64,000 nucleotides of DNA from Chrysemys picta bellii. Taxonomy: Eukaryota. Shown here piece after piece: positions 4,539 to 63,400 of the stretch (position 1 is the first letter of the stretch; each line of letters opens with the position of its first letter). The notes under the pieces were generated by a model. That model saw only the letters and a program-made list of their open reading frames with translations. It had not been told where the DNA came from and did no database searches. Position numbers and translations under genes: made by a program. The DNA lies in contig NC_088812.1 of assembly GCF_011386835.1 (NCBI RefSeq), positions 11,470,001 through 11,534,000 on the forward strand, read 5' to 3'.

Positions 4539-5053
4539 CGCCGGACGGCTCCGTGCAGCGCTGGGCGGTCGCCGGACGGCTCCGTGCAGCGCTGGGCGGT
4601 CGCCGGACGGCTCCGTGCAGTGCTAGGCGGTCGCCGGACGGCTCTGTGCAGCGCTGGGCGATTGCTGGAGGCTCCGTGCAGCGCTGGTCGGTCGCCAGAC
4701 GGCTCTGTGCAGCGTTGGGTGGTCGCCGGACGGCTCCGTGCAGCGCTGGGCGGTCGCCGGACGGCTCTGTGCAGTGTTGGGTGGTCGCCGGATGGTTCTG
4801 TGCAGCGCTGGGCGGTCGCCGGACGGCTCCATGCAGCGCTGGGCGGTCGCCGGATGGTTCTGTGCAGCGCTGGGCGGTCGCCGGACGGCTCCGTGCAGTG
4901 TGGTCGCTGGACGGCTCCGTGCAGCGCTGGGCGGTCGCCGGACGGCTCTGTGCAGTGCTGGGCGGTCGCCGGAAGGCTCCGTGCAGCATTGGATGGTCGC
5001 CGGACGGCTCCGTGCAGCGCTGGGCGGTCGCCGGATGGTTCTGTGCAGTGCTA
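4539..5053. repeat. 31-bp CpG-rich minisatellite, ~16-17 copies
   Basis: Unit CGCCGGACGGCTCCGTGCAGCGCTGGGCGGT. The period was measured at 4541 to 4572. Confidence 0.95.
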
Positions 5054-6749: not shown

Positions 6750-7881
6750 GTTAGAACAGGGGACGCAGGACTCCTGGGGTCCAGCCCAGCCCTGGAGGGA
6801 GTGGGGTGCAGTAGTTAGATCAGGGACGGATCGGGGTGCAGGACTCCTGGGGTCCAGCCCAGCCCTGGAGGGAGTGGGGTGCAGTAGTTAGATTAGGGAC
6901 GGATCGGGGTGCAGGACTCCTGGGGTCTAGCCCAGCCCTGGAGGGAGTGGGGTGCAGTAGTTAGATCGGGGACGGATCAGGGTGCAGGATTCCTGGGGTC
7001 CAGCCCAGCCCTGGAGGGAGTGGGGTGCAGTAGTTAGATTGGGGACGGATCGGGGTGCAGGACTCCTGGGGTCTAGCCCAGCCCTGGAGGGAGTGGGGTG
7101 CAGTAGTTAGATCAGGGACGGATCGGGGTGCAGGACTCCTGGGGTCCAGCCCAGCCCTGGAGGGAGAAGGGTGTAGTAGTTAGATCAGGGACGGATTGGG
7201 GTGCAGGACTCCTGGGGTCTAGCCCAGCCCTGGAGGGAGTGGGGTGCAGTAGTTAGATCGGGGACGGATCAGGGTGCAGGATTCCTGGGGTCCAGCCCAG
7301 CCCTGGAGGGAGTGGGGTGCAGTAGTTAGATTGGGGACGGATCGGGGTGCAGGACTCCTGGGGTCTAGCCCAGCCCTGGAGGGAGTGGGGTGCAGTAGTT
7401 AGATCAGGGACGGATCAGGGTGCAGGATTCCTGGGGTCCAGCCCAGCCCTGGAGGGAGTGGGGTGCAGTAGTTAGATTGGGGATGGATCGGGGTGCAGGA
7501 CTCCTGGGGTCTAGCCCCTGCCCTGGAGGGAGTGGGGTGCAGTAGTTAGATCAGGGACGGATCGGGGTGCAGGACTCCTGGGGTCCAGCCCAGCCCTGGA
7601 GGGAGAGGGGTGTAGTAGTTAGATCAGGGACGGATTGGGGTGCAGGACTCCTGGGGTCCAGCCCAGCCCTGGAGGGAGAGGGGTGCAGTAGTTGGATCGG
7701 GGTGCAGGACTCCTGGGGTCCAGCCCCAGCCCTGGAGGGAGTGGGGTGTAGTAGTTAGATCAGGGATGGATCAGGGTGCAGGACTCCTGGGGTCCAGCCC
7801 AGCCCTGGAGGGAGAGGGGTGCAGTAGTTGGATCGGGGTGCAGGACTCCTGGGGTCCAGCCCAGCCCTGGAGGGAGAGGGG
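6750..7881. repeat. 73-bp minisatellite, ~15 copies, SINE-derived
   Basis: CAGGACTCC recurs at 6766, 6839, 6912 and onward. Confidence 0.95.
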
Positions 7882-23700: not shown

Positions 23701-24417
23701 GGAAACTGGAAATTACCCCAGTTTAGCAAAATGTTCTAGGTGACGTTGTTGGTTTGTTTTAGTTGGAGGGCAGTAAGTGTAAAGAGAGCCCAGTTTTGCA
23801 AAATATTCTGGGTGTGTTTTATGGAAGGGGGGCAGTAAAACTAGGTGTGTGTGTGAGTGCAAACCTGGGTGAGCTTAAAAACTTCCTATGTAAAGTTCAG
23901 GCCCCAATCCTGCACTAATACACAGACTTACATTTAAATAAGAGTAAATCCCTTTGAATGATCACATGGTTATTTTCAGCCTCTGCAGAAATGTTTGCAA
24001 GACCATAACCATTGAGTGAGATTTGCACTAAACGCTCATTCAAAGTACAGGAAGCATCGTCCATAAGGGTTAAAAACAAACAAAGGTGGCAGGGCGGAGG
24101 CGTGCCAGTTTGGTGTACCTGGAGGCAGTCCTAGAACTGGGTGTGGGGAAGTAGTTTTGCAATCAAACAAGGCGATTCTCCTCTAATCCCCTCCCCGCCT
24201 TGCTGCAGGGCCCGCAGCCAGCCGGGAGCCCCCTACCCTGACCCTACAGCAGGGCTGAGCCCGGGCCCCTCTGGGACGGCGGCATCAGTTATGAATGGCC
24301 AACAAGTGCTTGGGCCCGGCCCTTCTTTCCTGACCCATTTAGCCCGGACCCAACGTGGCTGTTTAAAATACACCCGCGGTGCCAGCTGCCCGCGGGCCGC
24401 CCTGTTCTGCCATAAAG

Positions 24418-25632
24418 CCCCCCCCCATTCACTGTCCACTTCAGTCTTTCCACCTGCCCCCCCCTTCCACCTGCACCCCCCAGTCCCTGCCCCCTCCCCC
24501 CCATTCACTGTCCACTTCAGTCTTTCCACCTGCACCCCCCTTCCACCTTCCCCCCCCAGTCCCTGCCCCCTCCCCCCCCTTCACTGTCCACTTCAATCTT
24601 TCCACCTGCGCCCCCCCTTCCACCTGCCCCCCCAGTCCCTGCCCCCCCTTCACTGTCCACTTCAGTCTTTCCACCTGCCCCCCCCTTCCACCTGCACCCC
24701 CCAGTCCCTGCCCCCTCCCCCCCATTCACTGTCCACTTCAGTCTTTCCACCTGCACCCCCCTTCCACCTTCCCCCCCCAGTCCCTGCCCCCTCCCCCCCC
24801 TTCACTGTCCACTTCAATCTTTCCACCTGCCCCCCCCTTCCACCTGCCGCCCCCCCCAGTCCCTGCCCCCTCCCCCCCTTCACTGTCCACTTCAGTCTTT
24901 CCACCTGCCCCCCCTTCCACCTGCCGCCCCCCAGTCCCTGCCCCCCTTCACTGTCCACTTCAATCTTTCCACCTGCCCCCCCCCAGTCCCTGCCCCCTCC
25001 CCCCCATTCACTGTCCACTTCAGTCTTTCCACCTGCCCCCCCCCTTCCACCTGCACCCCCCAGTCCCTGCCCCCTCCCCCCCATTCACTGTCCACTTCAG
25101 TCTTTCCACCTGCACCCCCCTTCCACCTGCCGCCCCCCCCAGTCCCTGCCCCCTCCCCCCCCTTCACTGTCCACTTCAGTCTTTCCACCTGCCCCCCCCT
25201 TCCACCTGCCGCCCCCCCCAGTCCCTGCCCCCTCCCCCCCTTCACTGTCCACTTCAATCTTTCCACCTGCCCCCCCCTTCCACCTGCCCCCCCCTTCACT
25301 GTCCACTTCAATCTTTCCACCTGCACCCCCCTTCCACCTGCCCCCCCAGTCCCTGCCCCCCCTTCACTGTCCACTTCAGTCTTTCCACCTGCCCCCCCCT
25401 TCCACCTGCCGCCCCCCAGTCCCTGCCCCCTCCCCCCCTTCACTGTCCACTTCAATCTTTCCACCTGCCCCCCCCTTCCACCTGCCCCCCCCTTCACTGT
25501 CCACTTCAATCTTTCCACCTGCACCCCCCTTCCACCTGCCCCCCCAGTCCCTGCCCCCCCTTCACTGTCCACTTCAGTCTTTCCACCTGCCCCCCCCTTC
25601 CACCTGCCCCCCCCCCCAGTCCCTGCCCCCCC
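24418..25632. repeat. Pyrimidine/C-run-rich variable-unit tandem repeat (~17 units, ~52-79 bp)
   Basis: The core TTCACTGTCCACTTCA(G/A)TCTTTCCACCTG recurs, separated by C-runs. Confidence 0.93.
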
Positions 25633-25709
25633 TTCTGTGTTTTGTCCCTCCCGGCTGCCCCCACTCTGGCGCGGTCTATTCCTGGCCCGCGCCCCTCCCC
25701 CTCCCTGCC

Positions 25710-25965
25710 CGGGGGTCTATTTTTAGCCAGGGGCAGCGCTGGGCTATTTATAGATCAAACACGGCGCAGGCCTGCGTCAATGGAACCCCGTGTGCGTCAC
25801 CCGCCCAGACATTCCAGCGCGCCCCGCCCCCCCGGCCCGCGGGGACCGGAACAGGCCGCCCCTCCGCGCCTTGTATGGCCGGGGCTGCAGCCGGCCCTGC
25901 GTCAGCGGGTCCCCCCTCCTCTGGCCCCGCCCCCGCGCCGTGCGTCACAGAGGGCTTAAGAGGAT
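25710..25965 (+). promoter_or_regulatory. NR4A1: NR4A1 proximal immediate-early promoter
   Basis: MEF2 sites CTATTTTTAG (25717-25726) and CTATTTATAG (25744-25753). Four TGCGTCA sites (25773, 25793, 25898, 25941). CArG-like CCTTGTATGG (25869-25878). TATA-like TTAAG (25956-25960). CpG-rich. This matches the known mammalian Nur77 promoter architecture. Confidence 0.9.
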
Positions 25966-25984
25966 CCCCCCGCGCCGGGCTGGG

Positions 25985-26064
25985 AGCCCCAGAGCCGCTC
26001 CGAGCCCGTCCAGCCGCGGGGCGCCCGCCGAGCCGTGCCGAGCCGAGCCGTCCCGTCCCGCCGG
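25985..26064 (+). other. NR4A1: NR4A1 non-coding exon 1 (start approximate)
   Basis: Lies about 25-30 nt downstream of TTAAG, contains no ATG, and ends at the strong donor CCGG|gtatgt. The TSS is inferred. Confidence 0.8.
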
Positions 26065-27017
26065 GTATGTGGCTTGCTCGGCCCGCGGAGCGCTCCGGAG
26101 AGCCGTGCCGCCAGGTGGGAGCGCGGGGCGGGCGGGGGGCGCTCACCTGGCGGGGGGGGGGGGTCTCCGGTTTATGTTGCATGGGGGGGCGGTGCCGCCA
26201 GGTGGGAGCGCGGGCCGGGCCGGGCGGGGGGGCGCTCACCTGGCGGGGAGGGGGGAGCTGAGGCATGGGATTGGCGGCTGGGGGGGGTCTCCGGTTTATG
26301 TTGCATGGGGGGGGGGGGTGTTGCTGTCTCCTGTGCAGAGTTAAAGTGCAAGGTGGGATGGGGGGGGGCGTTCCTGTCCATTGAACTGGGCTCCGTTACG
26401 GGCTGCATTGGCTTTGGCGTGGGGGAGTCTCAAGTTGCAGGACCCCGACCTGGGAGTTGTGGGGGTGCATGCAGGCGGCGCTGAGCGGGCTGTGTTTATT
26501 TTTCTAGTCTCGATTGACGTTGTGCTGGGGGCTGTGGAGGTTGCAGGGGCAGCGTCTGGTGCTGCTCTTTGCTGTCTGAACGCAGCGGTGTCCAGTGGAT
26601 TTGGAGGGTGGGGGGCTCTTGTGTTGGCGGGTCAGATTTGATGCTGTGTGTTGCGCTGAGCGCCGGCTGCGTGCCAAGGCTGTGTGAGAAGTGACCGTGG
26701 GTCAGGATTGCTGTGGGCATATGGCAAAGTAACGGGAGCTCTCCAACAGCTCTTTAAAGCCCCTCTGCAAATTACCACCTTGCCCGTGTCCAGAGCCCTG
26801 TCCTCCTTTCTGCAGTCACCTTGGCAGGTTGGCGCTCGGCTTCCTTGTTTTGCTGTTTTCAATGCAGTGCTTAAAGTGTGTAGGGGGCAGCAGGGGGGCG
26901 TTGCAAGGGGTTGCAGACCTGGCCCAGTCAAAAAGTTTGTAAATTGTGTTGAGTCCCTGAGGGGCTCACTTTTAGCATTGTTTTAGCAAAGCTGCTGCTC
27001 CCAGGTTAAGATAACAC

Positions 27018-33199: not shown

Positions 33200-33476
33200 G
33201 CCCAAGGCATCTGAGCTGGGAATAGAAGACAGGTCTCCTGGTTCCTAGTCCGGTGCCTTATCCATGGTTCGCTCTATACCCCCCGATCAGAGGCATTTCC
33301 CTGGGGCCCATGGGAAAGGCTAGAGCCCGCCTCCCGCGTGGCATGTGCTGCACATCTGAGCTGGTGCCCTGCGCAAGTTCTCTACCCGATGAATGGGGAG
33401 CCCTGGCCTGGGGAGCGGGTGCGGTTCCAGCCTGATGTTAACGCCTCTGCCTTTCCCTTTGCCCCCTTGCTCAGAG

Positions 33477-34274
33477 ATGCCCTGTATCCAAATGCAGCAT
33501 GGGACCTTGCCTCAGAGCGGAGGGCCCTGTGAGCGCTACCCGGCAGACTTCCTGACTCCCGAGCTCAGCAAGTTCACAATGGACCTAGTCAACACCGAGA
33601 TCGCGGCCACCACCTCCCTGCCCAGCTTCAACACCTTCATGGAGAACTACAGCGGGGAGTTCGACACGTTCTTGTACCAGATCCCAGCCTCCAGCCAACC
33701 CACCTCCTTCAAACTCGAGGACTTCCAGGTGTACGGCTGCTACCCCGGCTCCTTCAGCAGCCAGCTGGACGAGACCATGTCTTCGAGCGGCTCGGACTAT
33801 TACGGCAGCCCCTGCTCCATCCCATCCCCGTCCACCCCAGGCTTCCAGACCCCGCAGGTCTCGGCGTGGGAGAGCTCCTTTGGGCCCTACTCGCCCACTC
33901 AGAACTACGAGGGCATGAGGCCCTGGGCGGAGCAGCCGAAAAGCAACTCTTCCCAGCCAGCCTTCTTCTTCGGCCCCTCGGCTCCCAGCCCCGGGGTCTC
34001 CCAGAGCCCCCTCAAGGTGCCGCCGGCCGCCGCACACCGGCTGGACACTGAGGTCTTCGCGCTTTCCCAGAGCTCCCCGGTGGGCTTTTCCGGCCTGTCC
34101 CTGGGCCAGGCCTCCCCGCACTTGGAGAGCCCCGCCTTGATGGACGGCTCCCTGTCGCCGGCCAAGACACGCAGCCCCGGGGCCAACGAGGGGCGCTGTG
34201 CCGTCTGCGGAGACAACGCCTCCTGCCAGCACTACGGCGTCCGCACCTGCGAGGGCTGCAAGGGCTTTTTCAAG
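33477..34274 (+). CDS. NR4A1: NR4A1 coding exon 2 (A/B domain and first zinc finger, 266 codons)
   Basis: Polypyrimidine acceptor ...ttgctcag|AG ATG CCC TGT ATC CAA gives MPCIQ, the Nur77 N-terminus. Ends [26 protein letters not shown]|gtatgg, containing the NR4A P-box CEGCKG. Confidence 0.97.
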
Positions 34275-48072: not shown

Positions 48073-49968
48073 GCCGATTTGCACCCGCTGGGGGTCCGGC
48101 CCCATTGACTCCAGTGGAGCTCTCGCTGATTTGCACCCGCTGGGGGTCCGGCCCCATTGACTCCAGTGGAGCTCTGGCTGATTTGCACCCGCTGGGGGTC
48201 TGGCCCCATTGACTCCAGTGGAGCTCCGGCTGATTGACGCCAGCTGGGGGTCCGGCCCCATTGACTCCAGTGGAGCTCCGGCTGATTGACGCCGGCTGGG
48301 GGTCCGGCCCCATTGACTCCAGTGGAGCTCTGGCTGATTGACGCCGGCTGGGGGTCTGGCCCCATTGACTCCAGTGGAGCTACGGCTGATTGACGCCGGC
48401 TGGGGGTCCGGCCCCATTGACTCCAGTGGAGCTCCGGCTGATTGACGCCGGCTGGGGGTCCGGCCCCATTGACTCCAGTGGAGCTCTGGCTGATTGACGC
48501 CGGCTGGGGGTCTGGCCCCATTGACTCCAGTGGAGCTACGGCTGATTGACGCCGGCTGGGGTCCAGCCCCATTGACTCCAGTGGAGCTCCGGCTGATTCA
48601 CACCAGCTGGGGGTCCGGCCCCATTGACTCCAGTGGAGCTACGGCTGATTGACGCCGGCTGGGGTCCAGCCCCATTGACTCCAGTGGAGCTCCGGCTGAT
48701 TCACACCAGCTGGGGGTCCGGCCCTATTGACTCCAGTGGAGCTACGGCTGATTCACACCAGCTGGGGGTCCGGCCCCATTGACTCCAGTGGAGCTACGGC
48801 TGATTCACACCAGCTGGGGGTCCGGCCCCATTGACTCCAATGGAGCTCTGGCTGATTGACGCCAGCTGGGGGTCCGGCCCCATTGACTCCAATGGAGCTA
48901 CGGCTGATTCAGACCAGCTGGGGTCCGGCCCCATTGACTCCAGTGGAGCTACGGCTGATTGACGCCAGCTGGGGTCCGGCCCCATTGACTCCAGTGGAGC
49001 TCCGGCTGATTGACGCCGGCTGGGGTCCGGCCCCATTGACTCCAGTGGAGCTCCGGCTGATTGACGCCAGCTGGGGATCTGGCCCCAGTGACTCCAATGG
49101 AGCTACGGCCGATTCACACCAGCTGGGGGTCCGGCCCCATTGACTCCAATGGAGCTACGGCCGATTCACACTAGCTGGGGGTCCGGCCCCATTGACTCCA
49201 ATGGAGCTACGGCCGATTCACACCAGCTGGGGATCTGGCCCCAGTGACTCCAATGGAGCTACGGCCGAGTCACACCGGCTGGGGGTCCGGCCCCATTGAC
49301 TCCAATGGAGCTACGGCCGATTCACACCGGCTGGGGATCTGGCCCCAGTGACTCCAATGGCGCTACGGCCGATTCACACCAGCTGGGGGTCCGGCCCCAT
49401 TGACTCCAGTGGAGCTACGGCCGATTCACACCGGCTGGGGATCTGGCCCCAGTGACTCCAATGGAGCTACGGCCGATTCACACTAGCTGGGGATCTGGCC
49501 CCAGTGACTCCAATGGAGCTACGGCCGATTCACTCCGGCTGGGGATCTGGCCCCATTGACTCCAATGGAGCTACGGCCGATTCACACCGGCTGGGGATCT
49601 GGCCCCATTGACTCCAATGGAGCTACGGCCGATTCACACCGGCTGGGGATCTGGCCCCATTGACTCCAGTGGAGCTACGGCTGATTGACGCCGGCTGGGG
49701 TCCGGCCCCATTGACTCCAATGGAGCTACGGCTGATTGACGCCGGCTGGGGGTCCGGCCCCATTGACTCCAGTGGAGCTCCGGCTGATTGACGCCGGCTG
49801 GGGGTCTGGCCCCATTGACTCCAGTGGAGCTCCGGCTGATTGACGCCAGCTGGGGGTCCAGCCCCATTGACTCCAGTGGAGCTCTGGCCGATTGACGCCA
49901 GCTGGGGGTCTGGCCCCATTGACTCCGGTGGAGCTCCGGCTGATTGACGCCAGCTGGGGGTCCAGCCC
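48073..49968. repeat. 51-52-bp minisatellite, ~36 copies
   Basis: Unit GGCCCCATTGACTCCA(G/A)TGGAGCT(C/A)CGGCTGATTGACGCCAGCTGGGGGTCC. The period was measured at 48101 to 48153. Confidence 0.95.
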
Positions 49969-52989: not shown

Positions 52990-53654
52990 AACCCTTCACA
53001 TGCTCCCCCTGGGGGGGGGTGTCAGTTATTAACCCTTTCCTACCGAGAGACAAGGTGAGGCACAGAAGTGAAGGGCCTGGGCACGGCTGCCAACTGAGGC
53101 AAGAACCCAGGTGTCCTGATTAGGAGACTAAATAAATTAGTATTTCACGCACGCTCCTTTATACGGTGCACCGGCCCCTGCAGCCCACTGCTGTCCACTA
53201 ACGAGGGCTTTGCCTTGTGCAGGGTGGTTCAAAGCCCCACTCTGGATCACCAGGGATGCTGTTTCCTCGGGATCCTTCGCCCGGCACCCAATTCCCAGGG
53301 GCTCCCTGGTAACTAACAATTGCTTCCTCCCTACGGGTATGTGTGGAGCTAAATCCACTGGCGCTAAATCCCGTCCCAGCCTCCCTACATCACAAGGTCT
53401 GCAACAGCTGCCGTGCTCGGATTTCTGCAGCCATCTTGAAATGCTCTCAGCTGCACAGATCTGCCTCTTCCAACCTCATTTGCACTTGCTCCCTTTCCTT
53501 GGTGAGCTGCTTGTCGCTCACTAATTAGGGCTGCATGACGATTGCTGGGGGCGGCTCTGCCATGGCCCTGCACCGGGGCAAAGGGTGTGACATGCTGCCA
53601 AAGCCGGAGGGGAGCGCTGCCAGGTACGGGGCTGTGACCTGTGCGAGGGACAGC

Positions 53655-54124
53655 TGTGACGAACTGGGACTGTTCTTGCTGGGGTGTGTGAATGCTGACA
53701 GGGGAGTGTGACTAGGATGGTCTGCATCGGGGGATGGGAGCCGGCCCAAGGGAACATACCTGAGCTTGTAACATGAGAACCCAGGAGGGGGTTGGAGGTC
53801 AGATGACTCCGGGGCCCGGGAAACTGAACAAAGGCGGTGGGAGGGGTCGCTAAAGGCAGAGTGCGGGAAGCAGGCTGAAAGGAGGCTGGAGAGATGGCTG
53901 GGAGGCAGAGATGGCTCTGACCCCCCAAGGGGGGTGGGCTGGCATGCCCTGGGACCCCAAGCTGGACCTAACTGAGGGGGGCCCTGTTGTCTGTGCCTGC
54001 AAGACCTGTCTTGGACTGTATTCCTGTCATCCAAATAAACCTTCTGCTTTACTGGCTGGCTGAGAGTCGCAGTGAATCTCGGGAAGAGGGGTGCAGGGCC
54101 CTAACTCCCCCACAATCCGCGACA
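53655..54124 (+). repeat. 5' LTR (470 bp)
   Basis: Runs TGTGACGAAC...ATCCGCGACA, with AATAAA at 54034-54039. No difference from the 3' LTR was found by eye. Confidence 0.95.
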
Positions 54125-54126
54125 AC

Positions 54127-54144
54127 TGGTGGCAGCGGCGGGAT
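54127..54144 (+). other. Primer-binding site, tRNA-Leu (AAG/TAG)-type
   Basis: TGGTGGCAGCGGCGGGAT lies 2 nt after the 5' LTR. It is complementary at 17/18 positions to the 3' end of vertebrate tRNA-Leu (...ATCCCACCGCTGCCA-CCA, recalled). Confidence 0.8.
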
Positions 54145-54464
54145 CTACTGCACCCCGTGGACGGCGCTTCCTGCAGTAAGTGACTGGGGAGCAGTAAAAC
54201 GAAGGGGGATTGACGGGGACCAGGCGTGCTGAAGAGTGAGAGAGAGACGGTTATTACCCCTGGGAGTGTGTGACCAGCGAGAAGGACTTTTGCAGTAACA
54301 GGGTCCCCCGGGGGGATCGCAGCGAGTGGTCCCAGGGGCGGAGGAGTCTGCAGCTCGACCCTGGCAGAGAGGTGGTGACCTCGAGAAGGGCTGGCACACT
54401 AGGGGTCCCCCTGGGAACTGTGGGGAGCTGTGAGCACACAGGCCGGTGAGTGGCCAGCAGGAAG

Positions 54465-57218
54465 ATGTATGCCAAGCGGCTTAAGAGCGACCTGGTGGAG
54501 CTGTGCAAGCAGAGGCGGCTGCGCATTGGGAGGCTCACCAAAGAACAGCTCATTGCCCAGCTGGAGGCGGAAGATCGTGCGAATGAACTGATCCCTGTGT
54601 CTCAGGGAAGCAGCCTGGCAAATGCAGCGCAGGCACCAGTGTCTGTCCCAGCTGGGAGTGGTCAGCCCGCTGCTGAGGGCTTCCCGAGACCCCTCCTTCC
54701 TATGCCTAGGGGAAGGGTGGGGAGGAGCCCAGCAAATACCGAAGGCGCCGTGACCCCCCCGGCCAGCAGGGGGTCCCCCCGGCGACGCTCGCCGGCCAGC
54801 AGAGGATCCTCCCGGCGACGTTCGGCATCCGGGGAGCGGAATTGGCTGGAATGGGAGAAAGAGCTAAAACTGAGAGAGCTGGAGGATCGTGAACAACAGA
54901 GACAGCATGAACGGGAGGAGAAAGAGAGACAGCATCAGCGTGAACGGGAGGAGAAAGAGAGACAGCATCAGCGTGAAGAGAGACAGCGTCAGCATGAACG
55001 GGAGGAGAATGAGAGACAGAGACAGCATGAAGAGAGACAGCGTCAGCATGACCTGGAACTGGCGAGATTGAAGGGCAGCGAACCCCCGGCTGCGGTGAGT
55101 GAGGGGGGACCCAGGACTGCACGGAGCTTTGATAAGTGCATCATGGCCCCATACAAGGAGGGGGAGGACATGGATGACTTCCTGGAGGCCTTTGAGACGG
55201 CCTGCGAGCTGCACCGGGTGGATCCCGCAGACAGACTCCGGGTCCTTACCCCCTTACTGGACCCCAAATCCGTGGCATTGTACCGCCAACTGGGAGAGGC
55301 AGAGAAAGGGGACTACGAACTATTCAAAAAGGCCCTGCTACGAGAGTTTGGGCTGACTCCTGAGATGTACCGGGAACGGTTCCGGAGTCAGGATAAAACC
55401 CCTGAGGTCTCATATTTGCAACTAGCCGTCCGCATGGAAAGATACGCCAGCAAGTGGGCTGGTGGGGCCCAGACGAAGGAGGACCTGATTAAACTGCTGG
55501 TACTGGAGCAACTGTATGAGCGGTGCCCATCCGACCTGAGGCTGTGGTTGGTGGACAGAAAGCCAGAGAACCCGCGACACGCCGGGCAGCTGGCTGATGA
55601 GTTTGTAAAGAGCCGGTCAGGGGGTGGCAGGGAGGAGCCCCAAAGGAACAGGCCCGCCGTGATGCAGAGAGAGAGTCACCCTGGGACCTCCCAAAGAGGG
55701 AATATGGGGAATCCCCTCCCACGGGGAATGCCCAGCGTCAGGGACAACCGACCGGCTCGAGGGGACCCACAGGACATGAGCTGCTATTACTGCGGCCGAA
55801 GAGGCCACGTTCGGGCCCAGTGCCCCAAGCTCAAGGACAGACTGAGCAGACCGAACCCGCATAGGGTTAACTTGGTAGAGGCCCAGACGGACGAGGGGCA
55901 GGCTTCTCACGCAAGAGGGGCTGGCAGCTTCTCAACTGCTCAAGAGAGAGAAGGGCCCCAGGCCAGCTCCTCTAGGGGGCTGGATGCCCCAGACTCAGGG
56001 TTTTTGGTTTATACGGTGGGCGCGGGGCTGTCCCTCCGGAGAGAGTACCTTGTTCCCCTGGAGGTGGATGGGAGGAAGGTCAATGGATACTGGGATACGG
56101 GCGCAGAGGTGACGCTGGCCCGGCCCGAGGTGGTGGCCCCAGATCAGGTGGTGCCCAACTCCTACCTGACCCTGACGGGGGTGGGCGGAACACCAGTCAA
56201 AGTGCCCGTGGCAAGGGTACACCTGAAGTGGGGGGCCAAGGAGGGCCCCAAGGATGTGGGGGTACACCCGTATTTGCCCACTGAGGTATTGATGGGGGGG
56301 GACCTGGAGAACTGGCCAAGCAACCCCCAAAAGGCACTGGTTGTGACCCGCAGTCAGAGCCGGCGAGGGGCCCTGCGCCCTGGCCTTGGGGGGGGTGCCT
56401 TGCCTGAGGCGCAGGACCCTAACCTGGTGGGGAGGGAACGCCCAGGGACACGGCTCAAGGAGGCTGCAGCTTCAGACCCAGCGGGCGAGAAAGAGCAGGT
56501 GGCCATCCCTGTCCCAGCTGCTGAGTTCCAGGCCGAGTTACAGAGAGACCCCTCCTTGCGGAAGATAAGGGACCTGGCCGACCTCAATGCGGTACAGACC
56601 ATGGGACGAGGTGGCCGGAAAAGATTCCTGTGGGAGAAGGGGTTCCTGTACCGAGAATGGGCTCCCCCAGGGAAAATGGAGTCAGGGGGGATCAGGAGGC
56701 AGCTGGTGGTACCCCAGAAGTATCGCCGCCAGCTGCTGTGCCGGGCCCATGACATTCCCCTCTCAGGGCACCAGGGAACCTGGCGTACCCAGCAGAGGCT
56801 GCTACGGAGCTTTTACTGGCCTGGGGTCTTTGTTACTGTCCGACAGTACTGCGGATCCTGTAACCCCTGTCAGAGGGGGAGGAAGGCCTGGGACAAGGGG
56901 AAAACAGCTTTAGGACCCTTGCCCAGCATAAAGGATCCTTTCCGGAGGGTGGCCAAGGTTAAAAGGGCGGCTCTAAACCAAGAGAGCCCAAAGCACAGAC
57001 CTCCAGACTGGAGCGCTGGGAGAAGACCACAGCCCAGTTGGAACCCCAGAGGTATGGGGGTGGGGAAAGGGCACAGGCCGCATAAACCTTCCCACATGCG
57101 AACTGCGAGTGCCATCAAGCACCCCCGACCTAAGGGGGGGCGTGGAACGGAAGGGGCCTGGTGTAACTCCCACCAAGGAACTGGAGGGATGCGGGGGCAT
57201 CCATGGGAACGGGGGTAG
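54465..57218 (+). CDS. Retroelement polyprotein: Gag (SCAN-type capsid domain, CCHC knuckle), aspartic protease, integrase H2C2 zinc finger; 917 aa from first ATG
   Basis: SCAN-like LTPEMYRERFR...TKEDLIKLLVLEQLY...WL...P...AGQLADEF (~55343-55610). CYYCGRRGHVRAQC (55782-55823). YWDTGAEVT with DTG at 56094. AHDIPLSGH...FYWPG...YCGSCNPCQ (56748-56870). No RT YxDD, RNase H or IN DDE core. Confidence 0.9.
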   Translation: MYAKRLKSDLVELCKQRRLRIGRLTKEQLIAQLEAEDRANELIPVSQGSSLANAAQAPVSVPAGSGQPAAEGFPRPLLPMPRGRVGRSPANTEGAVTPPASRGSPRRRSPASRGSSRRRSASGERNWLEWEKELKLRELEDREQQRQHEREEKERQHQREREEKERQHQREERQRQHEREENERQRQHEERQRQHDLELARLKGSEPPAAVSEGGPRTARSFDKCIMAPYKEGEDMDDFLEAFETACELHRVDPADRLRVLTPLLDPKSVALYRQLGEAEKGDYELFKKALLREFGLTPEMYRERFRSQDKTPEVSYLQLAVRMERYASKWAGGAQTKEDLIKLLVLEQLYERCPSDLRLWLVDRKPENPRHAGQLADEFVKSRSGGGREEPQRNRPAVMQRESHPGTSQRGNMGNPLPRGMPSVRDNRPARGDPQDMSCYYCGRRGHVRAQCPKLKDRLSRPNPHRVNLVEAQTDEGQASHARGAGSFSTAQEREGPQASSSRGLDAPDSGFLVYTVGAGLSLRREYLVPLEVDGRKVNGYWDTGAEVTLARPEVVAPDQVVPNSYLTLTGVGGTPVKVPVARVHLKWGAKEGPKDVGVHPYLPTEVLMGGDLENWPSNPQKALVVTRSQSRRGALRPGLGGGALPEAQDPNLVGRERPGTRLKEAAASDPAGEKEQVAIPVPAAEFQAELQRDPSLRKIRDLADLNAVQTMGRGGRKRFLWEKGFLYREWAPPGKMESGGIRRQLVVPQKYRRQLLCRAHDIPLSGHQGTWRTQQRLLRSFYWPGVFVTVRQYCGSCNPCQRGRKAWDKGKTALGPLPSIKDPFRRVAKVKRAALNQESPKHRPPDWSAGRRPQPSWNPRGMGVGKGHRPHKPSHMRTASAIKHPRPKGGRGTEGAWCNSHQGTGGMRGHPWERG

Positions 57219-57270
57219 GTTCGAACTTCCCCAGGTCACTGGCTAAAGTGACCCCGCTCAGTTCGGTCTC

Positions 57271-57284
57271 GAAGGGGGGAGAGA
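57271..57284 (+). other. Polypurine tract
   Basis: GAAGGGGGGAGAGA lies immediately 5' of the 3' LTR. Confidence 0.9.
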
Positions 57285-57754
57285 TGTGACGAACTGGGAC
57301 TGTTCTTGCTGGGGTGTGTGAATGCTGACAGGGGAGTGTGACTAGGATGGTCTGCATCGGGGGATGGGAGCCGGCCCAAGGGAACATACCTGAGCTTGTA
57401 ACATGAGAACCCAGGAGGGGGTTGGAGGTCAGATGACTCCGGGGCCCGGGAAACTGAACAAAGGCGGTGGGAGGGGTCGCTAAAGGCAGAGTGCGGGAAG
57501 CAGGCTGAAAGGAGGCTGGAGAGATGGCTGGGAGGCAGAGATGGCTCTGACCCCCCAAGGGGGGTGGGCTGGCATGCCCTGGGACCCCAAGCTGGACCTA
57601 ACTGAGGGGGGCCCTGTTGTCTGTGCCTGCAAGACCTGTCTTGGACTGTATTCCTGTCATCCAAATAAACCTTCTGCTTTACTGGCTGGCTGAGAGTCGC
57701 AGTGAATCTCGGGAAGAGGGGTGCAGGGCCCTAACTCCCCCACAATCCGCGACA
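57285..57754 (+). repeat. 3' LTR (470 bp)
   Basis: Direct repeat of 53655-54124, preceded by a polypurine tract. Confidence 0.95.
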
Positions 57755-59329
57755 ACAGCCAATGGTGACTCCAGGTGCTCTGCCCACCGAGGACACAAGC
57801 AGCCAAAGGCCGGGGGTGTGGGGGGCGGTGCCGGCGCAGGGGACCCGGATTCTGTTCCTGACGCTGCTGCTGGCTGGCCTCAGACGGGTCACTTAGGGTC
57901 AGACTTTTAAAGGTATTTGGGCAGCGTTTCCATCCCCCCTTTAAACGAGGGATTTCAGCCCTTCCTGCCTTGCGAGCCTGGCAGCGCTGTGGAGCCCGGA
58001 GCACCTGCATTCTGGGTCTGTCCAGCACCTCGTGCCCCAGGCTCCTCCCCACCGGGCCCTAGCAGAGGCTCTCGGTACAGCTGTGATACTGTCCATCAGG
58101 CAGTGGGACCTCTCTGGAGTCCCGCAGCTGGCTGGGGTGTGCTGGGCACACGCGTGTCTCGCCCCGAGACACGACGGGGTTTGAGGACAGCAGCCAGTGA
58201 AGCATAGGGGGCGCTCAGGAGACGGCGCGTGGGAAGCGGTGACGTTCCAGCGAGCTCACGCCCGGCCTCCTTTGCCTGCTTCAGGGACAAGCGCTAACTA
58301 GCCACAGGCCAGAGCAGCGTTAACTCGATTACCCTCCACCAGCCATGCACCAGGCCGGGGCTGGCACTGCCCCCGAGCCAGCGCGTTCCACGAGGAGCTA
58401 CTCAGCAATGCCATGATTGCGGCTGACGATATATTTAGCCTTGACCTGGCTATAAATTAATTTGTAAACTGCGACTTTAACAAATAAAGCAGCTGCAAGA
58501 CAGAGCGAGGGAGAGGAGTCGGGGAGCCTGCTGCTCTGGGCAGAAGAGGCAAACGAGTGTCCTTTTTCCGTACATGCTGTTCTGGAAAAAAGACCTGCTC
58601 CCCCCTGAGCCAGAAAGGCTGGCATTATAGGGCTCTGCATGGAGATTTGCTCCATCTCACGTAAATCAGGAGCTGCTTGGATCCTCTTGCACCAAAAATG
58701 CACAGGCCTCAAGCTGAAGGAGAATCCCTATGTGCTGGTAACAGTATAGGCCTTATGACACACATCAGGGTAGCCTGACTCCATTCAGACAGTGGTTGCC
58801 AGTTCATTGCACTGTTACCTCCGAAGTGGGCGCTACATCCAATCAACCCCCCTCCCTTCACCTTTCTGGAGGTCCTACAGTTGTGAATTGCTCCCTTGCC
58901 TAACAGCCATGAGCAACCCTTGCAGTGACCTAGAGCAGGGAGACAGTCCGCCCTATCCAGGGCTCGATTTGTACTGAAAGGGGTTCTGGGGCTCAGCCCT
59001 GACCTTGTCGTGCTACTCGGGTCGCTGAGGGGTACCTGGCGGCCCTGCAGGAACTCGCTGGGGCTGGGTCTTGGGTGGCCCCTGGGGAATGACAGAGCCT
59101 GAATCTTGCTGACCTCACCCTGCAGTAAAAATAGCCCCATGTTGGCGGGACGCTGCAAAGCCCTGGCCCGGCTGGGCCATGCTCGAGGAGAGCCAGGTCC
59201 AGGTTTGAAATAGAACAGACCAGCCGGGTGTGAAGGGCGGCTGCAGGGTCGTGCAGGCCAAGACCTGCTTTCTTAGGCCAGTGCAAAATAGGAGGGGCAG
59301 AGGAATGTTTTCTGCATGTAACTAAAATC

Positions 59330-59389
59330 ATGTCTGTCCCCACACATATCCTGTGTCTATCTGTCTGTCCTCGACTCCCCACACAGACC

Positions 59390-59420
<31 letters not shown>

Positions 59421-60417
59421 CCCAACTCCCCACACAGACCCTGTGTCTGTCTGTCTGTCTGTCCGTCCCCGACTCCCGACACAGACCCTGTGTCTGTCTG
59501 TTTGTCTGTCCCCAACTCCCCACACATACCCTGTGTCTATCGGTCCCCACACAGACCCTGTGTCTGTCTGTCTGTCCCTCCCCAACTCACCACACAGACC
59601 CTGTGTTTGTCTGTCTGTCTGTCCTCGACTCCCCACACATACCCTGTGTCTGTCTGTCCTCGACTCCCCACACAGACCCTCTGTCTGTCTGTCTGTCTGT
59701 CCGTCCCCAACTCCCCACACAGACCCTGTGTCTATCTGTCTGTCCTCGACTCCCCACACAGACCCTCTGTCTGTCTGTCTGTCTGTCCGTCCCCAACTCC
59801 CCACACAGACCCTGTGTCTGTCCTCGACTCCCCACACAGACCCTGTGTCTGTCTGTCTGTCCCCGACTCCCGACACATACCCTGTGTCTGTCTGTCTGTC
59901 TGTCCGTCCCCAACTCCCCACACATACCCTGTGTCGTCTGTCTGTCTGTCCTCGACTCCCCACACATACCCTCTGTCTGTCTGTCTGTCCCCGACTCCCG
60001 ACACATACCCTGTGTCTGTCTGTCTGTCTGTCCGTCCCCAACTCCCCACACATACCCTGTGTCGTCTGTCTGTCTGTCCTCGACTCCCCACACATACCCT
60101 GTGTCTGTCCTCGACTCCCCACACATACCCTGTGTCGTCTGTCTGTCTGTCCCCGACTCCCCACACATACCCTGTGTCTGTCCTCGACTCCCCACACAGA
60201 CCCTGTGTCTGTCTGTCTGTCTGTCCCTGACTCCCCACACATACCCTGTGTCTGTCTGTCTGTCCCTGACTCCCCACACATACCCTGTGTCTGTCCTCGA
60301 CTCCCCACACAGACCCTCTGTCTGTCTGTCCCCGACTCCCGACACATACCCTCTGTCTGTCTGTCTGTCTGTCCATCCGTCCCCAACTCCCCACACAGAC
60401 CCTGTGTCTGTCTGTCT
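59330..60417. repeat. Compound array: ~23-bp core (CTCGACTCCCCACACAGACCCTG) alternating with (TGTC)n tracts
   Basis: Seen directly. Unit length varies with the TGTC count. Confidence 0.93.
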
Positions 60418-63400
60418 TTCTCAGCACTCCCTCGCTCCTCTGTTTCTCCAGGATTCGATTTGTAGGGGAGGGAGTCTGGGAAATCGGCCCTTGTTCCCTC
60501 ACGTGATCTGCCTGCGGGTGAAATATCAGCTCTCCGCGTATGCGTCTGCACACCTGCGCTCACTAGCATTGTGCGTTCTCCTTCCGCTCTCTGCGTTGCA
60601 CCAGGCTAGTCACCATGGGCTGTCCCCAGTCAGTCATGGCTTGTGACTCACCCTGTACTCCCGACGGCAGCCCATGGCCACCGAGGCAGGGCTGGGGCCT
60701 TGGCTTGCAGCCCAGGGTCGGTGGTAGCCAGGGACTGGCTGCGTTTCAAGTGTCCTAACAGAGGCAGGTCATGTTCAAATGAGGCAGTCAGCAGTTCGGT
60801 ATTTTGGTCTATAATCAATCACCGCGCTGCTTCCCCGGGCACCAGGGCTCCAGGCTAGGCCAGGCATGCGTGAGGCCAGGACAGCTGTAGCCCGGGTTGG
60901 TACCTTTGGAAAATACTTTCAGAAGCAAATATGAGCCGCTCTTATCCAGCCCGGCTGCAACCTGCCAAACGTCTCGATACAGCATGAGACGTTTTCCTTC
61001 TGCCTCCTTAAAGCCCCAGGAGCAGAGGAATGACGCTGGCGTCTGTGCTCTGCTGCTCGGTATCTGTATTGTGTCTCCTGGGAGCAGGGCTGCACCGTGC
61101 ACAGGGTAACGATGTACCCGGACAGAGCTCCGCTGCGCAAGGTGCTGCCCAGACCATGCTGAGAGCCGCTAGGCCCCGCAGAGCTCGCGCGCCAAAGGGC
61201 TGGAGAAAAGGACTCAGCCCCATTTCACAAACCCACGGCACACAGGGAGTCTCTGGGAGAGATGGGAAGTGAACTGAGACCTCCAGGGCTTTTGCCCACA
61301 AGTGAAAAAGCTGCCAGACCTTCTCCAGCGTGTGTGACTGTCACCCCCCAGTGGTGGCCGCCCCGGCAGCGCTAACACCGGATGGTGCTAGACAAGGATC
61401 AGGGCCCATTGTACCAACCAGTGACACGAGCAGGACGCTTGGGATGTGGGTAATGGGTTATGCCCAGGGAGCGGGCGTCAGGGGAGCTGCATTCTAGGCC
61501 CAGCGCTGACAACTTCTCTCATTCTGTGACCTTAGCCGACGCTTTTAAAGTCGCCATGTGCCTCGGTATCCCCATCTCTAAAATGGGGCTAATACTGATC
61601 CACTTCACAGGGAGTAATCAGCTACCCACTTGTGACGGGGGCGTCCGAGGTGGGGCGGTAAAAACGCTCACTAGTTTTATCGTGACAGGGAGTGTTGTGC
61701 AAAAATAGCAGATAGGGCAGGCTGGAAAATTGCCCAAGGGAGACGGGCGGGTAAATGCACGAAAGCTGCTAGGGTGGTGATGGGTGCGAGTGAGTCCAGC
61801 TCTCTGCCTTCAGTGAGACACCAGCAAAGCCCTCCCTTGGGGCGAGCAGCCGGCACCTCGGCCCGCTCCCTGGCAGCTCCACGCTGGGGGGCCTGTCCCG
61901 GACTCTCCTCCCGCCCAGCGCAGGGCCTGTCCCCTTCCCAGCCGGGGCAGCGCTCTCTGCAGCGACGGCCCCCGAATTCCTTCCGCCTTGGCAGCACCCC
62001 AGTGAAATCCATCCCCTGGTACTTGTCAAACCCGGGCTCTCCTCACCCCAGGGCTATTTATACAGCCAGCATTCTTCCAGGGGCGCTCAGCAGCGCGCGG
62101 GCCAGGCCCGCCTGGCAGGCCGGATGAAAAAATCCAACAGCCTGTCAGCTTCCAACGCCCAGCCCTGCCCCTGCGCCGCCCCAGGCCTGGGCATAACACC
62201 AGCCCCCTCTGAATGCCTGTAAATGGCTGGGTGAGGTGCAGGGGGAACCAGGCCATAGGGCTGCATGGTCGTCCCAGCTAGGAGATGAGCGCACACCCGG
62301 CCTCCCCATTGGACCCCCCCAACCCCGCCAGCGGCTAACCGCCGGGGCTGCTCTCGTTGGCTTTGAGCTCCCCCGCCTGTCAGGGGCTGGCGGAGCAGGA
62401 CGCCTGGTCAGTGTCAGCGTCCCTGCTGCAGGCGAAGGAGACGGCTCAGCCGCAGTGAACGTAAAGAGGGCCCTGTGTTGCGGCTGCTGCTGGCCACGGC
62501 CAGACCCTGTGGCTCTCTCTAGGTCCCCGGCTCGCTTTGCCATTGCCCTGCGCCTGGCGCCGCTAGCTGGGCCCGTGCAAGGTGGCAGCAACTCACACCC
62601 ACTCCGCACTAGTGTAAATAATCCAAGGGGCGACAGAGCATCAGACTCAGGGGTCCCCTAACGCCTGGCGTGGACTGTGCCGCATTGGAAGGGACAACTG
62701 GCTACACTGCCCCTGCAGGGGCCCCGTCTCCGATCCTACCGGCGCCCCATCCCACGGGGCCCCAGGCTACTCCCCGATCCTACGGGGCCCCAGGCTGCTC
62801 TCTGACCCCTAGGGCGCTGTGTCCACAGCTCGCTCATATATACTCCAGCCAAGTTCTTCCTCTCTGCAACAGCGCCCTCGGCAGCTTGCAGGAGATGCTT
62901 GTGCTATAAGAACCGAACCCTGCAAGCAACCGCCCTTTAAAACTGGCTCCTTCCACTGAATGATCTTAACGCTCTTGAGAAATACCATACTGTCCCGGGG
63001 GGAAACTGAGGCACACAGAGCCGCAAAACGATTTGCCATAGGTCCTACAAGTCCCTGCTCGAGGCAGAAAGAGAATGTGGGTCTCCTGGCTCCAGTTCTC
63101 CCTATGCTAACCAGTGGACCCCACTCCCAGAACTGGGGCTAGGACTGGGCCACGGTTTATCCACAGGCTCAACCTTCCTCCTCAGTGTAAAATATAAAAG
63201 TAAGAAGTAACTCCGATGTAATGACGCAGCAGCAGGGGAGGAAGGGCGAGTCTGGGGCCCCCACCCGTCCACGACGTCCCTTCCCCAGATCACACCCTAA
63301 GACAGAGCTTCCCGGCCGGACGGGAGGGTTCCCATCGGAATGACCTCACTGACGGGCAGCCCAGAGCTCAGCGCTAGGAATAGCCCATTCGGGCATCACG

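What the first reader, a model, noticed from the sequence alone, without database searches (positions are those of the whole stretch)
53655..57754. Very young non-autonomous Gmr1-like LTR element with an intact SCAN-Gag-protease ORF but no enzymatic pol
Seen: apparently identical 470-bp LTRs, a perfect 5-bp TSD, an intact PBS and PPT, and a stop-free ORF of over 900 codons. The ORF breaks at ...LPSIKDPFRRVA (~56954), right where the first Asp of the integrase DDE core should follow, and RT and RNase H are absent. Established: Gmr1-like elements place IN before RT, and their Gag is the proposed source of the SCAN domain of vertebrate zinc-finger factors. Inference: the element was mobilised in trans by a helper while supplying its own capsid and protease, a 'semi-autonomous' parasite. 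It could also be a source of free SCAN-domain protein able to heterodimerise with host SCAN-ZNFs.
Basis: partly seen in the sequence, partly recalled or inferred. Interest (0 to 1): 0.75.

Follow-up and report, generated by a model that had tools for sequence, protein, structure and literature searches.

The report
Turtle retrotransposon parasite with own capsid
This is a freshly inserted copy of a turtle jumping gene that has lost its copying enzymes. It still encodes its own capsid and protease, belongs to an old multi-copy lineage, and must borrow enzymes from full-length relatives, with which it repeatedly swaps sequence.

Summary
The two LTRs (53655-54124 and 57285-57754) are 470/470 identical. 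They are flanked by a perfect ACAGC duplication, with a primer-binding site and a polypurine tract in place. One 917-codon ORF (54465-57218) encodes a SCAN-type capsid, a CCHC knuckle, a retropepsin and only the zinc-binding head of integrase.

Homology to full-length relatives stops at 56954, one residue before the first integrase core Asp. It resumes only for the last 20 codons of pol, in another frame.

The deletion is not private. Sixteen annotated Chrysemys picta loci on 11 chromosomes, and a Gopherus tortoise protein, share the identical junction and filler. Chrysemys also carries at least 8 intact full-length Gag-IN-RT-RNaseH proteins, which are candidate helpers.

Segment trees show mosaicism. 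The gag-protease part groups with the local full-length elements in each host family. The linker, integrase relic and tail form one truncated-only clade (100/100; AU tests p about 1e-4).

My reading is an old helper-dependent lineage, still active, that recombines with its helpers. Use of its own Gag and protease is plausible but unproven. SCAN heterodimerisation was not tested.

The parts
53650..53654 (.). Target-site duplication, left copy (ACAGC)
   Evidence: Read directly. Identical to 57755-57759.
53655..54124 (+). 5' LTR, 470 bp, TG...CA termini, AATAAA at 54034-54039
   Evidence: 470/470 identical to the 3' LTR.
54125..54464 (+). Leader or 5' UTR. PBS-like sequence at 54127-54145, starting TGG two bases after the LTR
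   Evidence: Sequence. Assignment to a tRNA-Leu 3' end is from memory only. There is no tRNA gene in the window to compare.
54465..57218 (+). Single ORF of 917 codons: Gag (CA with SCAN-type C-terminal domain, NC), protease, integrase zinc-domain relic and an 87-residue foreign tail
   Evidence: 97-98% identical to annotated Chrysemys picta proteins P0001 and P0059, among others.
54867..55031 (+). In-frame 27/33-bp tandem repeat encoding an E/R/Q-rich stretch. Repeat number differs between copies
   Evidence: Length differences among copies map here.
55359..55616 (+). SCAN domain, i.e. capsid C-terminal domain (aa 299-384)
   Evidence: Pfam SCAN E=3.6e-11, 43.2 bits against cut-off 27. Sequence hits to ZNF24 SCAN 3LHR and PEG3 SCAN 4BHX. 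The model is helical with pLDDT 82-94.
55779..55829 (+). Nucleocapsid CCHC zinc knuckle (aa 439-455)
   Evidence: Pfam zf-CCHC 21.3 bits against cut-off 20.8. The CCHC residues are kept in all 17 copies.
56037..56324 (+). Retropepsin-type protease (aa about 525-620). DTGA at 56094-56105, GGD motif near aa 611-613
   Evidence: AlphaFold model beta region with pLDDT 84-92. Foldseek top hits are the Ddi1 RVP domain 7D66 and HIV-1 protease, E about 2e-6, prob 1.0. Pfam RVP only sub-threshold, E=0.04. 5/77 changes at sites invariant in full-length elements.
56709..56882 (+). Integrase N-terminal zinc-binding (H2C2) domain, a relic without the catalytic core
   Evidence: Pfam Integrase_H2C2 E=3.2e-17. 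14/63 changes at sites invariant in full-length elements. It evolves about 10 times faster than in full-length elements.
56952..56957 (+). Deletion junction: last pol-derived codon (Ala830, ends 56954) followed by the first filler codon
   Evidence: blastx homology ends at 56954. The same junction RVA|KVKRAALNQES is present in 17/17 copies and, diverged, in Gopherus P0014.
56955..57222 (+). 268-bp filler of unknown origin. It encodes the basic, Pro/Gly-rich tail of the ORF
   Evidence: No match to pol of any relative in any frame, to the rest of the window, to Pfam or to Rfam. The proximal 48 residues are 75% conserved in Gopherus P0014 in the same frame. The distal part is read in at least 3 frames among copies.
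57223..57282 (+). Remnant of the last 20 codons of pol, in a different frame from the ORF, with an in-frame TAA
   Evidence: blastx 90% to the C-termini of P0008, P0020, P0023 and P0072.
57271..57284 (+). Polypurine tract abutting the 3' LTR
   Evidence: Sequence. The C-terminal peptide ...EGGRDVT of full-length relatives is encoded across the same PPT/LTR-start sequence.
57285..57754 (+). 3' LTR, 470 bp
57755..57759 (.). Target-site duplication, right copy (ACAGC)

Best explanation
The feature is one recent insertion of a non-autonomous Gmr1-like (Ty3/mdg4-type) LTR retrotransposon in an emydid turtle genome. The closest relatives are in Chrysemys picta bellii.

**Origin of the lineage.** It arose once, when the region from the integrase catalytic core to almost the end of RNase H was replaced by a 268-bp filler. 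This left a single ORF for Gag (SCAN-type capsid, CCHC nucleocapsid), protease, a dead integrase zinc-domain relic and a foreign tail.

**Dependence on a helper.** The element has no RT, RNase H or integrase core. Its reverse transcription and integration must therefore be done by proteins of co-resident full-length elements of the same family. It keeps the cis signals those proteins need: LTR ends, PBS, PPT and presumably a leader or gag packaging signal.

**Recombination.** The truncated and full-length elements repeatedly recombine, most simply by template switching between co-packaged RNAs (inferred). As a result the parasite's gag-protease half stays matched to the local helper, while the 3' relic drifts.

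**Shown:** anatomy, shared junction, copy multiplicity, intact helpers, mosaic phylogeny.

**Inferred:** trans-mobilisation, co-packaging, use of its own Gag and protease.
For: **Structure.** LTRs are identical 470/470. TSD, PBS and PPT are in place.

**Domain content and order.**

**The deletion predates this insertion.**
- The identical junction and filler occur in 16 Chrysemys loci of 871-930 aa on 11 different chromosome-scale sequences.
- They also occur in Gopherus evgoodei P0014.
- An element without RT or IN that still shows a TSD and identical LTRs must have been copied by proteins made elsewhere.

**Candidate helpers.**
- At least 8 intact Gag-Pol proteins of 1552-1644 aa are annotated in Chrysemys. 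Two of them are each encoded identically at two loci.
- Their Gag is 97-100% identical to the window's in the N-terminal, CA and SCAN segments (aa 1-120 and 201-385), and 93% in NC.
- Their C-terminal peptide encodes the same PPT plus TGTGAC LTR start.

**Mosaicism.**
- In linker plus IN relic, all truncated copies including Gopherus form one clade (100/100), apart from the full-length clades of each host family.
- In SCAN plus PR, the Gopherus truncated copy is sister to a tortoise full-length element, and Chrysemys truncated and full-length copies intermix.
- AU tests reject the opposite groupings (p=5e-5; p=1e-4).
- NC and PR types occur in several combinations among copies.

**Gradient of decay at sites invariant in 10 full-length elements.** CA plus SCAN 0/68, NC 1/33, PR 5/77, linker 5/50, IN relic 14/63. 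Fisher test for CA plus SCAN against IN relic gives 1.5e-5.
Against: - A helper with matching LTR, PBS and leader is therefore not shown, and dN/dS and the ages of other copies are unknown.
- The species of the window is not established. Its exact protein is absent from the collection, so co-residence with the Chrysemys helpers is inferred from 97-100% identity.
- The copy census comes from gene annotation, which favours open ORFs.
- Mosaicism could also come from DNA-level gene conversion between genomic copies.
- Within the window-type subfamily, amino-acid variability is no lower in Gag-PR (23/420) than in the relic (13/297, p=0.6). There is thus no sign of protein-level constraint after insertion.
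- The AU groupings were named after the segment identities had been seen.
Confidence: 0.8

Rival explanations
1. Pure cis-parasite. The element is mobilised entirely by helper proteins, Gag and protease included. Its own ORF is irrelevant and is open only because the 5' half is continually refreshed from helpers and the copies are young.
For: - No within-subfamily constraint on Gag-PR relative to the relic.
- The window-type protease has 5/77 changes at otherwise invariant sites.
- The IN relic is decaying, and the distal tail is read in at least 3 frames among copies.
- One copy (P0051) has DTV instead of DTG.
Against: - The ORF is open over about 830 codons in 17/17 long copies and in the Gopherus protein.
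- It is open even through the fast-evolving relic and filler. A neutral simulation to the observed 25% residue divergence gives P(no stop)=0.015, and no indel is seen in 258 aligned codons.
- CA/SCAN shows 0/68 changes at invariant sites.
- CCHC is kept in all 17 copies, and DTGA and GGD in 16/17.
Confidence: 0.3
2. The mosaic pattern comes from ectopic gene conversion or unequal recombination between integrated DNA copies, not from template switching in particles. It would then say nothing about co-packaging.
For: Mosaic blocks alone do not distinguish the two mechanisms. Truncated and full-length loci are sometimes adjacent in Chrysemys: LOC135982107, LOC135982110 and LOC135982111 lie on one chromosome.
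Against: Template switching between co-packaged RNAs is the established main source of recombinants in retroelements (reviews PMC3187697 and PMC5086612, found). The same 5'-local / 3'-lineage pattern recurs in two host families. Recombinant types have themselves spread to several chromosomes, which requires later retrotransposition in any case.
Confidence: 0.2
3. A one-off dead deletion derivative, or an assembly collapse, at this locus.
For: Only one copy is present in the 64-kb window.
Against: The same junction and filler are found in 16 other loci and in a tortoise. There is no N or gap in the window.
Confidence: 0.01
4. A domesticated host gene family derived from Gag-protease (PEG10- or SCAND-like), rather than a mobile element.
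For: Long open ORFs are annotated as 'uncharacterized protein LOC...' at many loci. The ORF is kept open through non-conserved sequence.
Against: Identical LTRs, TSD, PBS and PPT. Many dispersed near-identical copies. Ongoing exchange with full-length elements. No evidence of orthologous single-copy conservation.
Confidence: 0.03

Closest known systems
[quoted passage not shown]
   Same: The capsid C-terminal domain scores as SCAN. Protease is followed directly by the integrase zinc domain. Full-length relatives in turtles have the order SCAN-NC-PR-IN-RT-RNaseH in one ORF.
   Different: This lineage lacks the IN core, RT and RNase H and carries a foreign 268-bp filler. It cannot be autonomous.
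[quoted passage not shown]
   Same: A deletion derivative with one shared breakpoint that still encodes part of the polyprotein. It is amplified as a family and depends on full-length relatives.
   Different: I-delta-1 is described as recent and keeps part of pol. The turtle lineage keeps Gag and protease, lacks RT, RNase H and the IN core (keeping only the IN zinc-domain relic and a 20-codon pol tail), is shared by two turtle families, and shows repeated exchange of its gag half with helpers.
ETn/MusD pair of the mouse (PMC1331978)
   Same: A non-autonomous family mobilised by proteins of a related coding-competent family that shares its LTRs.
   Different: ETn is non-coding. The turtle element keeps a 917-codon ORF. 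LTR sharing with the helper could not be tested here.
Plant helper-parasite LTR pairs (BARE-2/BARE-1, Dasheng/RIRE2, soybean SNRE/SARE with LTR swapping).
   Same: Long-lived partnership in which the non-autonomous partner stays matched to the autonomous one through recombination.
   Different: Different superfamily lineages and hosts. Here the exchanged part shown is gag-protease coding sequence. The LTRs could not be compared.
LARD and TRIM non-autonomous elements
   Same: LTR-bounded, helper-dependent.
   Different: By definition they lack coding capacity. This element does not fit that definition.

Membership tests
LTR retrotransposon (structural definition) | Two direct LTRs with TG...CA termini, flanked by a short target-site duplication | tested here: met
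   470/470 identical LTRs. TG...CA termini. 5-bp ACAGC on both sides.
LTR retrotransposon (structural definition) | PBS next to the 5' LTR and polypurine tract next to the 3' LTR | tested here: met
   A TGG-initiated 19-nt stretch lies 2 nt after the LTR. The purine run 57271-57284 abuts the 3' LTR. The cognate tRNA was not verified.
Gmr1-like clade of Ty3/mdg4 | Integrase encoded upstream of RT/RNase H | tested here: met
   In the element, protease is followed by Integrase_H2C2. In full-length relatives 64-86% identical to it, the order is H2C2-rve-SH3 and then RVT_1-RNaseH.
Gmr1-like clade of Ty3/mdg4 | Gag capsid C-terminal domain homologous to SCAN | tested here: met
   Pfam SCAN above the gathering score. 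PDB sequence hits to ZNF24 and PEG3 SCAN.
Gmr1-like clade of Ty3/mdg4 | RT or IN phylogeny groups with Gmr1 of Gadus morhua | not tested
   No Gmr1 reference sequence was obtained. The element itself has no RT.
Non-autonomous, trans-mobilised LTR family | Lacks RT, RNase H or the IN core | tested here: met
Non-autonomous, trans-mobilised LTR family | The same deletion is shared by many dispersed copies, i.e. amplification happened after the deletion | tested here: met
   17/17 long copies, on 11 chromosome-scale sequences, plus Gopherus P0014.
Non-autonomous, trans-mobilised LTR family | A coding-competent relative is present in the same genome | tested here: inconclusive
   At least 8 intact Gag-Pol proteins of 1552-1644 aa are annotated in Chrysemys picta bellii. 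The species of the window is not proven, and there is no helper in the window itself.
Non-autonomous, trans-mobilised LTR family | The helper shares LTR ends, PBS and packaging leader | not testable with these tools
The only indirect support is that the helper C-terminal peptide EGGRDVT encodes the same PPT plus LTR start.
Non-autonomous, trans-mobilised LTR family | Experimental mobilisation by helper proteins | not testable with these tools
   Bench step; referred.
LARD/TRIM | No protein-coding capacity | tested here: not met
   917-codon ORF with recognisable domains.
Domesticated Gag/SCAN host gene | Single-copy orthologous locus without LTRs | tested here: not met
   Identical LTRs, TSD, and many dispersed copies.

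The most novel reading that the evidence does not exclude
A Gag-protease-encoding parasite lineage of Gmr1-like elements has persisted since before the emydid-tortoise split. It has done so by serially replacing its gag-protease half with that of whichever full-length element is resident. It also keeps its reading frame open through a decaying integrase relic and a foreign filler. That would imply a translation-dependent (cis) requirement for propagation and a long-standing natural source of SCAN-type capsid protein uncoupled from pol. This is the kind of intermediate from which a host could capture a SCAN domain.
Probability: 0.4. Interest if true: 0.6.

Novelty: new member of a known kind. 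Interest (0 to 1): 0.45.

Why it matters
Helper-dependent deletion derivatives are well known in mice and plants. Active helper-parasite pairs are hardly documented for Gmr1-like elements or for reptiles.

Here both partners appear intact and recently active. This copy has identical LTRs, and two full-length proteins are each encoded identically at two loci. The parasite's junction is shared by two turtle families, which gives a natural long-term experiment on how a parasite stays matched to its helper.

The data point to recombination as the means of matching, with a 5'-to-3' gradient from helper-like to decayed sequence. Gmr1-like Gag is the accepted source of the vertebrate SCAN domain. A pol-less element expressing SCAN-type capsid is therefore a concrete model for how such a domain becomes available to the host.

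Practically, the family also contaminates turtle gene annotation, both as 'uncharacterized protein LOC...' entries and as chimeric models.

Tried and rejected
I therefore had no DNA of other copies, no dN/dS, no LTR/PBS comparison with helpers and no TSD check at other loci.
- **Metagenome scan** for a 26-nt junction pattern gave 0 hits.
- **Rfam** on the element gave only a chance-level miRNA hit at E=0.49.
- **ARAGORN** found no tRNA gene in the window, so the PBS could not be verified.
- **Origin of the 268-bp filler.** blastx against sea-turtle and Chrysemys full-length proteins in all frames, blastn against the window, and Pfam all gave nothing beyond the terminal 20 codons.
- **Within-subfamily variability** as a stand-in for selection was uninformative (p=0.6). 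It measures post-insertion decay, not selection on active lineages.
- **P0030 and P0036** (SCAN plus H2C2 only, about 24% identity) were considered as convergent truncated forms and rejected. They run into the integrase core, so they are simply cut-off models.
- **A SAP-like N-terminus** was suspected by eye, but Pfam finds nothing.
- **The capsid part of the fold search** was swamped by protease hits. The capsid fold therefore rests on Pfam, PDB sequence matches and the helical model.
- **The large representative-protein search** was not used. The word searches and family scans left nothing open that it would settle.

Full report
**1. What is in the sequence**

The window is GC-rich (about 60%), rich in minisatellites, and has no N.

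- **LTRs.** Two direct repeats, 53655-54124 and 57285-57754, are identical at all 470 positions. They begin TG and end CA.
- **TSD.** They are flanked by ACAGC at 53650-53654 and 57755-57759.
- **PBS.** A TGG-initiated primer-binding-site-like stretch starts two bases after the 5' LTR, at 54127. I recall that it matches the 3' end of a tRNA-Leu. That is memory, not a test, and the window has no tRNA gene to compare.
- **PPT.** A purine run at 57271-57284 abuts the 3' LTR.
- **ORF.** A single ORF runs from ATG 54465 to TAG 57216-57218, 917 codons.
- **Domains.** Pfam finds SCAN (aa 299-384), a CCHC knuckle (439-455) and the integrase zinc-binding domain (749-806). It finds no integrase core, RT or RNase H.
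- **Protease.** DTGA lies at aa 544-547. An AlphaFold model of aa 200-620 gives a confident helical capsid region and a beta-rich region. The best PDB matches of the beta region are the Ddi1 retropepsin domain and HIV-1 protease.
- **SCAN.** The SCAN region also matches the ZNF24 and PEG3 SCAN structures by sequence.

**2. The break**

blastx against full-length relatives shows homology ending exactly at nt 56954 (...PFRRVA). The relatives continue there with MDIVG, which holds the first Asp of the DDE triad. Homology returns only at 57223-57282. That stretch is the last 20 codons of pol, read in another frame and carrying a TAA.

The 268 bp in between (56955-57222) match nothing: not pol in any frame or strand, not the rest of the window, not Pfam, not Rfam. 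So this is a deletion with filler, not a clean deletion. The filler supplies an 87-residue basic tail to the ORF.

**3. Family and host**

The closest proteins are from turtles. Full-length relatives in sea turtles and in Chrysemys picta bellii have the order SCAN-NC-PR-IN(H2C2, rve, SH3)-RT-RNaseH in one ORF. That is the Gmr1-like order. [quoted passage not shown]

The window's exact protein is not in the collection. It is 97-98% identical to annotated Chrysemys copies. The host is therefore an emydid turtle, Chrysemys or a close relative.

**4. The deletion is family-wide and old**

Cluster look-ups give 16 Chrysemys loci with ORFs of 871-930 aa, on 11 different chromosome-scale sequences. 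All 16, plus the window, share the identical junction RVA|KVKRAALNQES. A search with the tail alone finds only these clusters and one more protein, Gopherus evgoodei P0014. P0014 carries the same junction and filler in the same frame, at 75% identity.

The lineage therefore spans Emydidae and Testudinidae. I recall this split as many tens of millions of years old; I did not check it here. A simulation equates the observed 25% residue divergence of the relic with about 14% nucleotide divergence, which is in keeping with an old, roughly neutral divergence.

This insertion, by contrast, is young, with 0 differences between its LTRs. The chance of seeing 0 differences is exp(-2 x 470 x mu x T). 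At an assumed rate of 0.5-1e-9 per site per year, the 95% upper bound is about 3-6 million years.

**5. Candidate helpers**

Chrysemys has at least 8 distinct intact Gag-Pol proteins of 1552-1644 aa. Two of them are each encoded identically at two loci, which points to recent activity. Their Gag is 97-100% identical to the window's in the N-terminal, CA and SCAN segments (aa 1-120 and 201-385), and 93% in NC. Their C-terminal peptide ...EGGRDVT is encoded across the same PPT-plus-TGTGAC sequence that the window has.

**6. Mosaic structure**

Segment identities:

| Segment | Pattern |
|---|---|
| N-terminal and CA/SCAN (aa 1-120, 201-385) | Truncated and full-length Chrysemys copies are 91-100% alike, against 65-78% to sea-turtle elements |
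| NC (aa 386-490) | Three types occur among the copies |
| Protease (aa 491-620) | At least two types occur, in different combinations with the NC types |
| Linker + IN relic (aa 621-830) | Truncated copies are 92-99% alike but only 68-77% identical to the Chrysemys full-length elements |

- **Local match in Gopherus.** The truncated P0014 has SCAN (88%) and protease (86%) closest to a tortoise full-length element. Its linker, relic and tail are closest to the Chrysemys truncated copies.
- **Trees.** In linker plus relic, all truncated copies form one clade (100/100), separate from the host-family clades of full-length elements. In SCAN plus protease, the truncated copies group with their local full-length elements.
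- **AU tests.** These reject the opposite groupings (p=5e-5; p=1e-4). The groups were named after the identities had been seen.

In both host families, then, the 5' half tracks the local helper and the 3' half tracks the parasite lineage. This is recurrent recombination. Template switching between co-packaged RNAs is the established route in retroelements (PMC3187697 and PMC5086612). It would imply that parasite and helper RNAs share particles. DNA-level gene conversion is not excluded.

**7. Which parts are constrained**

Changes in the window copy at positions invariant in 10 full-length elements from four turtle families:

| Segment | Changed / invariant sites |
|---|---|
| CA + SCAN | 0/68 |
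| NC | 1/33 |
| Protease | 5/77 |
| Linker | 5/50 |
| IN relic | 14/63 |

- **Statistics.** The Fisher test for CA plus SCAN against the IN relic gives 1.5e-5.
- **IN zinc domain.** It is 97.6% conserved between Chrysemys and Chelonoidis full-length elements, but only 74% between Chrysemys-type and Gopherus truncated copies. The Gopherus copy has lost the second His. The domain is a decaying relic.
- **Distal tail.** It is read in at least three frames among copies.
- **Open frame.** The frame stays open through linker, relic and proximal filler in both lineages, with no indel in 258 aligned codons. A neutral simulation gives P(no stop)=0.015. Something selects for an uninterrupted ORF without caring about the residues. 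One untested idea is avoidance of a long 3' UTR in an element type that normally has no gag stop.
- **Window-type subfamily.** Within it, residue variability is no lower in Gag-PR than in the relic (p=0.6). That is expected for post-insertion decay and says nothing about active lineages.

Capsid function is thus well supported as intact. For this subfamily's protease, function is uncertain: the catalytic motifs are kept, but there are five unusual substitutions.

**8. Comparison with what is known**

The closest analogues are as follows.

- **Mouse IAP I-delta-1.** It has a shared 1.9-kb gag-pol deletion, needs coding-competent IAPs in trans, and is the most active IAP subtype.
- **ETn/MusD.** This is the other mouse helper-parasite pair. 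Both mouse cases are taken from PMC1331978.
- **Plant helper-parasite pairs.** BARE-2/BARE-1 and soybean SNRE/SARE are recalled from my own knowledge.

LARD and TRIM do not fit, because this element codes for protein. It is not a domesticated gene, given its LTRs, TSD and many dispersed copies.

I file it as a new member of a known kind: a non-autonomous, partly coding LTR family. It is notable for being Gmr1-like, for retaining Gag and protease, for its age, and for clear evidence of exchange with its helpers.

**9. Limits**

- There is no nucleotide data for other copies, so dN/dS, LTR ages, TSDs at other loci and helper LTR/PBS identity remain open.
- The census depends on gene annotation, which favours open ORFs.
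- The species of the window is inferred.
- SCAN heterodimerisation with host factors was not tested.
One bench step is referred.

Noticed in passing
window 33393-34270 (+): An ORF with a long Ser/Pro-rich N-terminal region ends in the first half of a nuclear-receptor C4 zinc finger (Pfam zf-C4, positions 2-28 of 70, E=3e-11). By eye it looks like the first coding exon of an NR4A-type receptor. The element lies about 19 kb downstream on the same strand.
   Followed up: partly
window 48082-49968; 6765-7881; 24421-25638; 59337-60421; 4538-5056: Large minisatellite arrays: 52 bp x 36, 73 bp x 16, a C-rich 76-bp array that gives GC skew -0.52 at 24-26 kb, a 39-bp array x 26, and 31 bp x 17. They create long spurious ORFs, for example 24141-26261 and 59328-60646.
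   Followed up: no
Chrysemys picta bellii proteins P0005/P0067, P0017, P0031, P0194: Annotated 'host' proteins are chimeric with the element. These are CDK12-like / mucin-1-like with a SEA domain, an Ig-domain protein, GBP1-like, and a dystrobrevin beta isoform. P0005 carries the first 550 residues of the Gag-PR ORF at 97% identity, followed by unrelated sequence. This is either exonisation or annotation artefact.
   Followed up: partly
Lepidochelys kempii protein P0004: An independent deletion derivative in a sea turtle. It has SCAN, NC, the IN zinc domain and the start of the IN core, joined directly to the RNase H region (...YPEAVP|HFSAIATP...). The breakpoint differs from the one studied here.
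   Followed up: partly
Chrysemys full-length proteins P0182 and P0186: Each exact Gag-Pol protein of 1619-1644 aa is recorded under two different LOC ids, which suggests very recent transposition of the autonomous partner. Truncated and full-length loci are also adjacent: LOC135982107, LOC135982110 and LOC135982111.
   Followed up: no
window 54867-55031: The in-frame 27/33-bp repeat in the Gag N-terminal region (E/R/Q-rich) varies in copy number between element copies. It accounts for most of the ORF length differences (871-930 aa).
   Followed up: partly
window-type subfamily, 8 copies: Residue diversity is higher in the N-terminal, CA and SCAN segments (pairwise 2.3-3.2%) than in protease, linker and tail (0.4-0.9%). 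This is as if the 5' parts of near-clonal copies were drawn from several gag alleles.
   Followed up: partly
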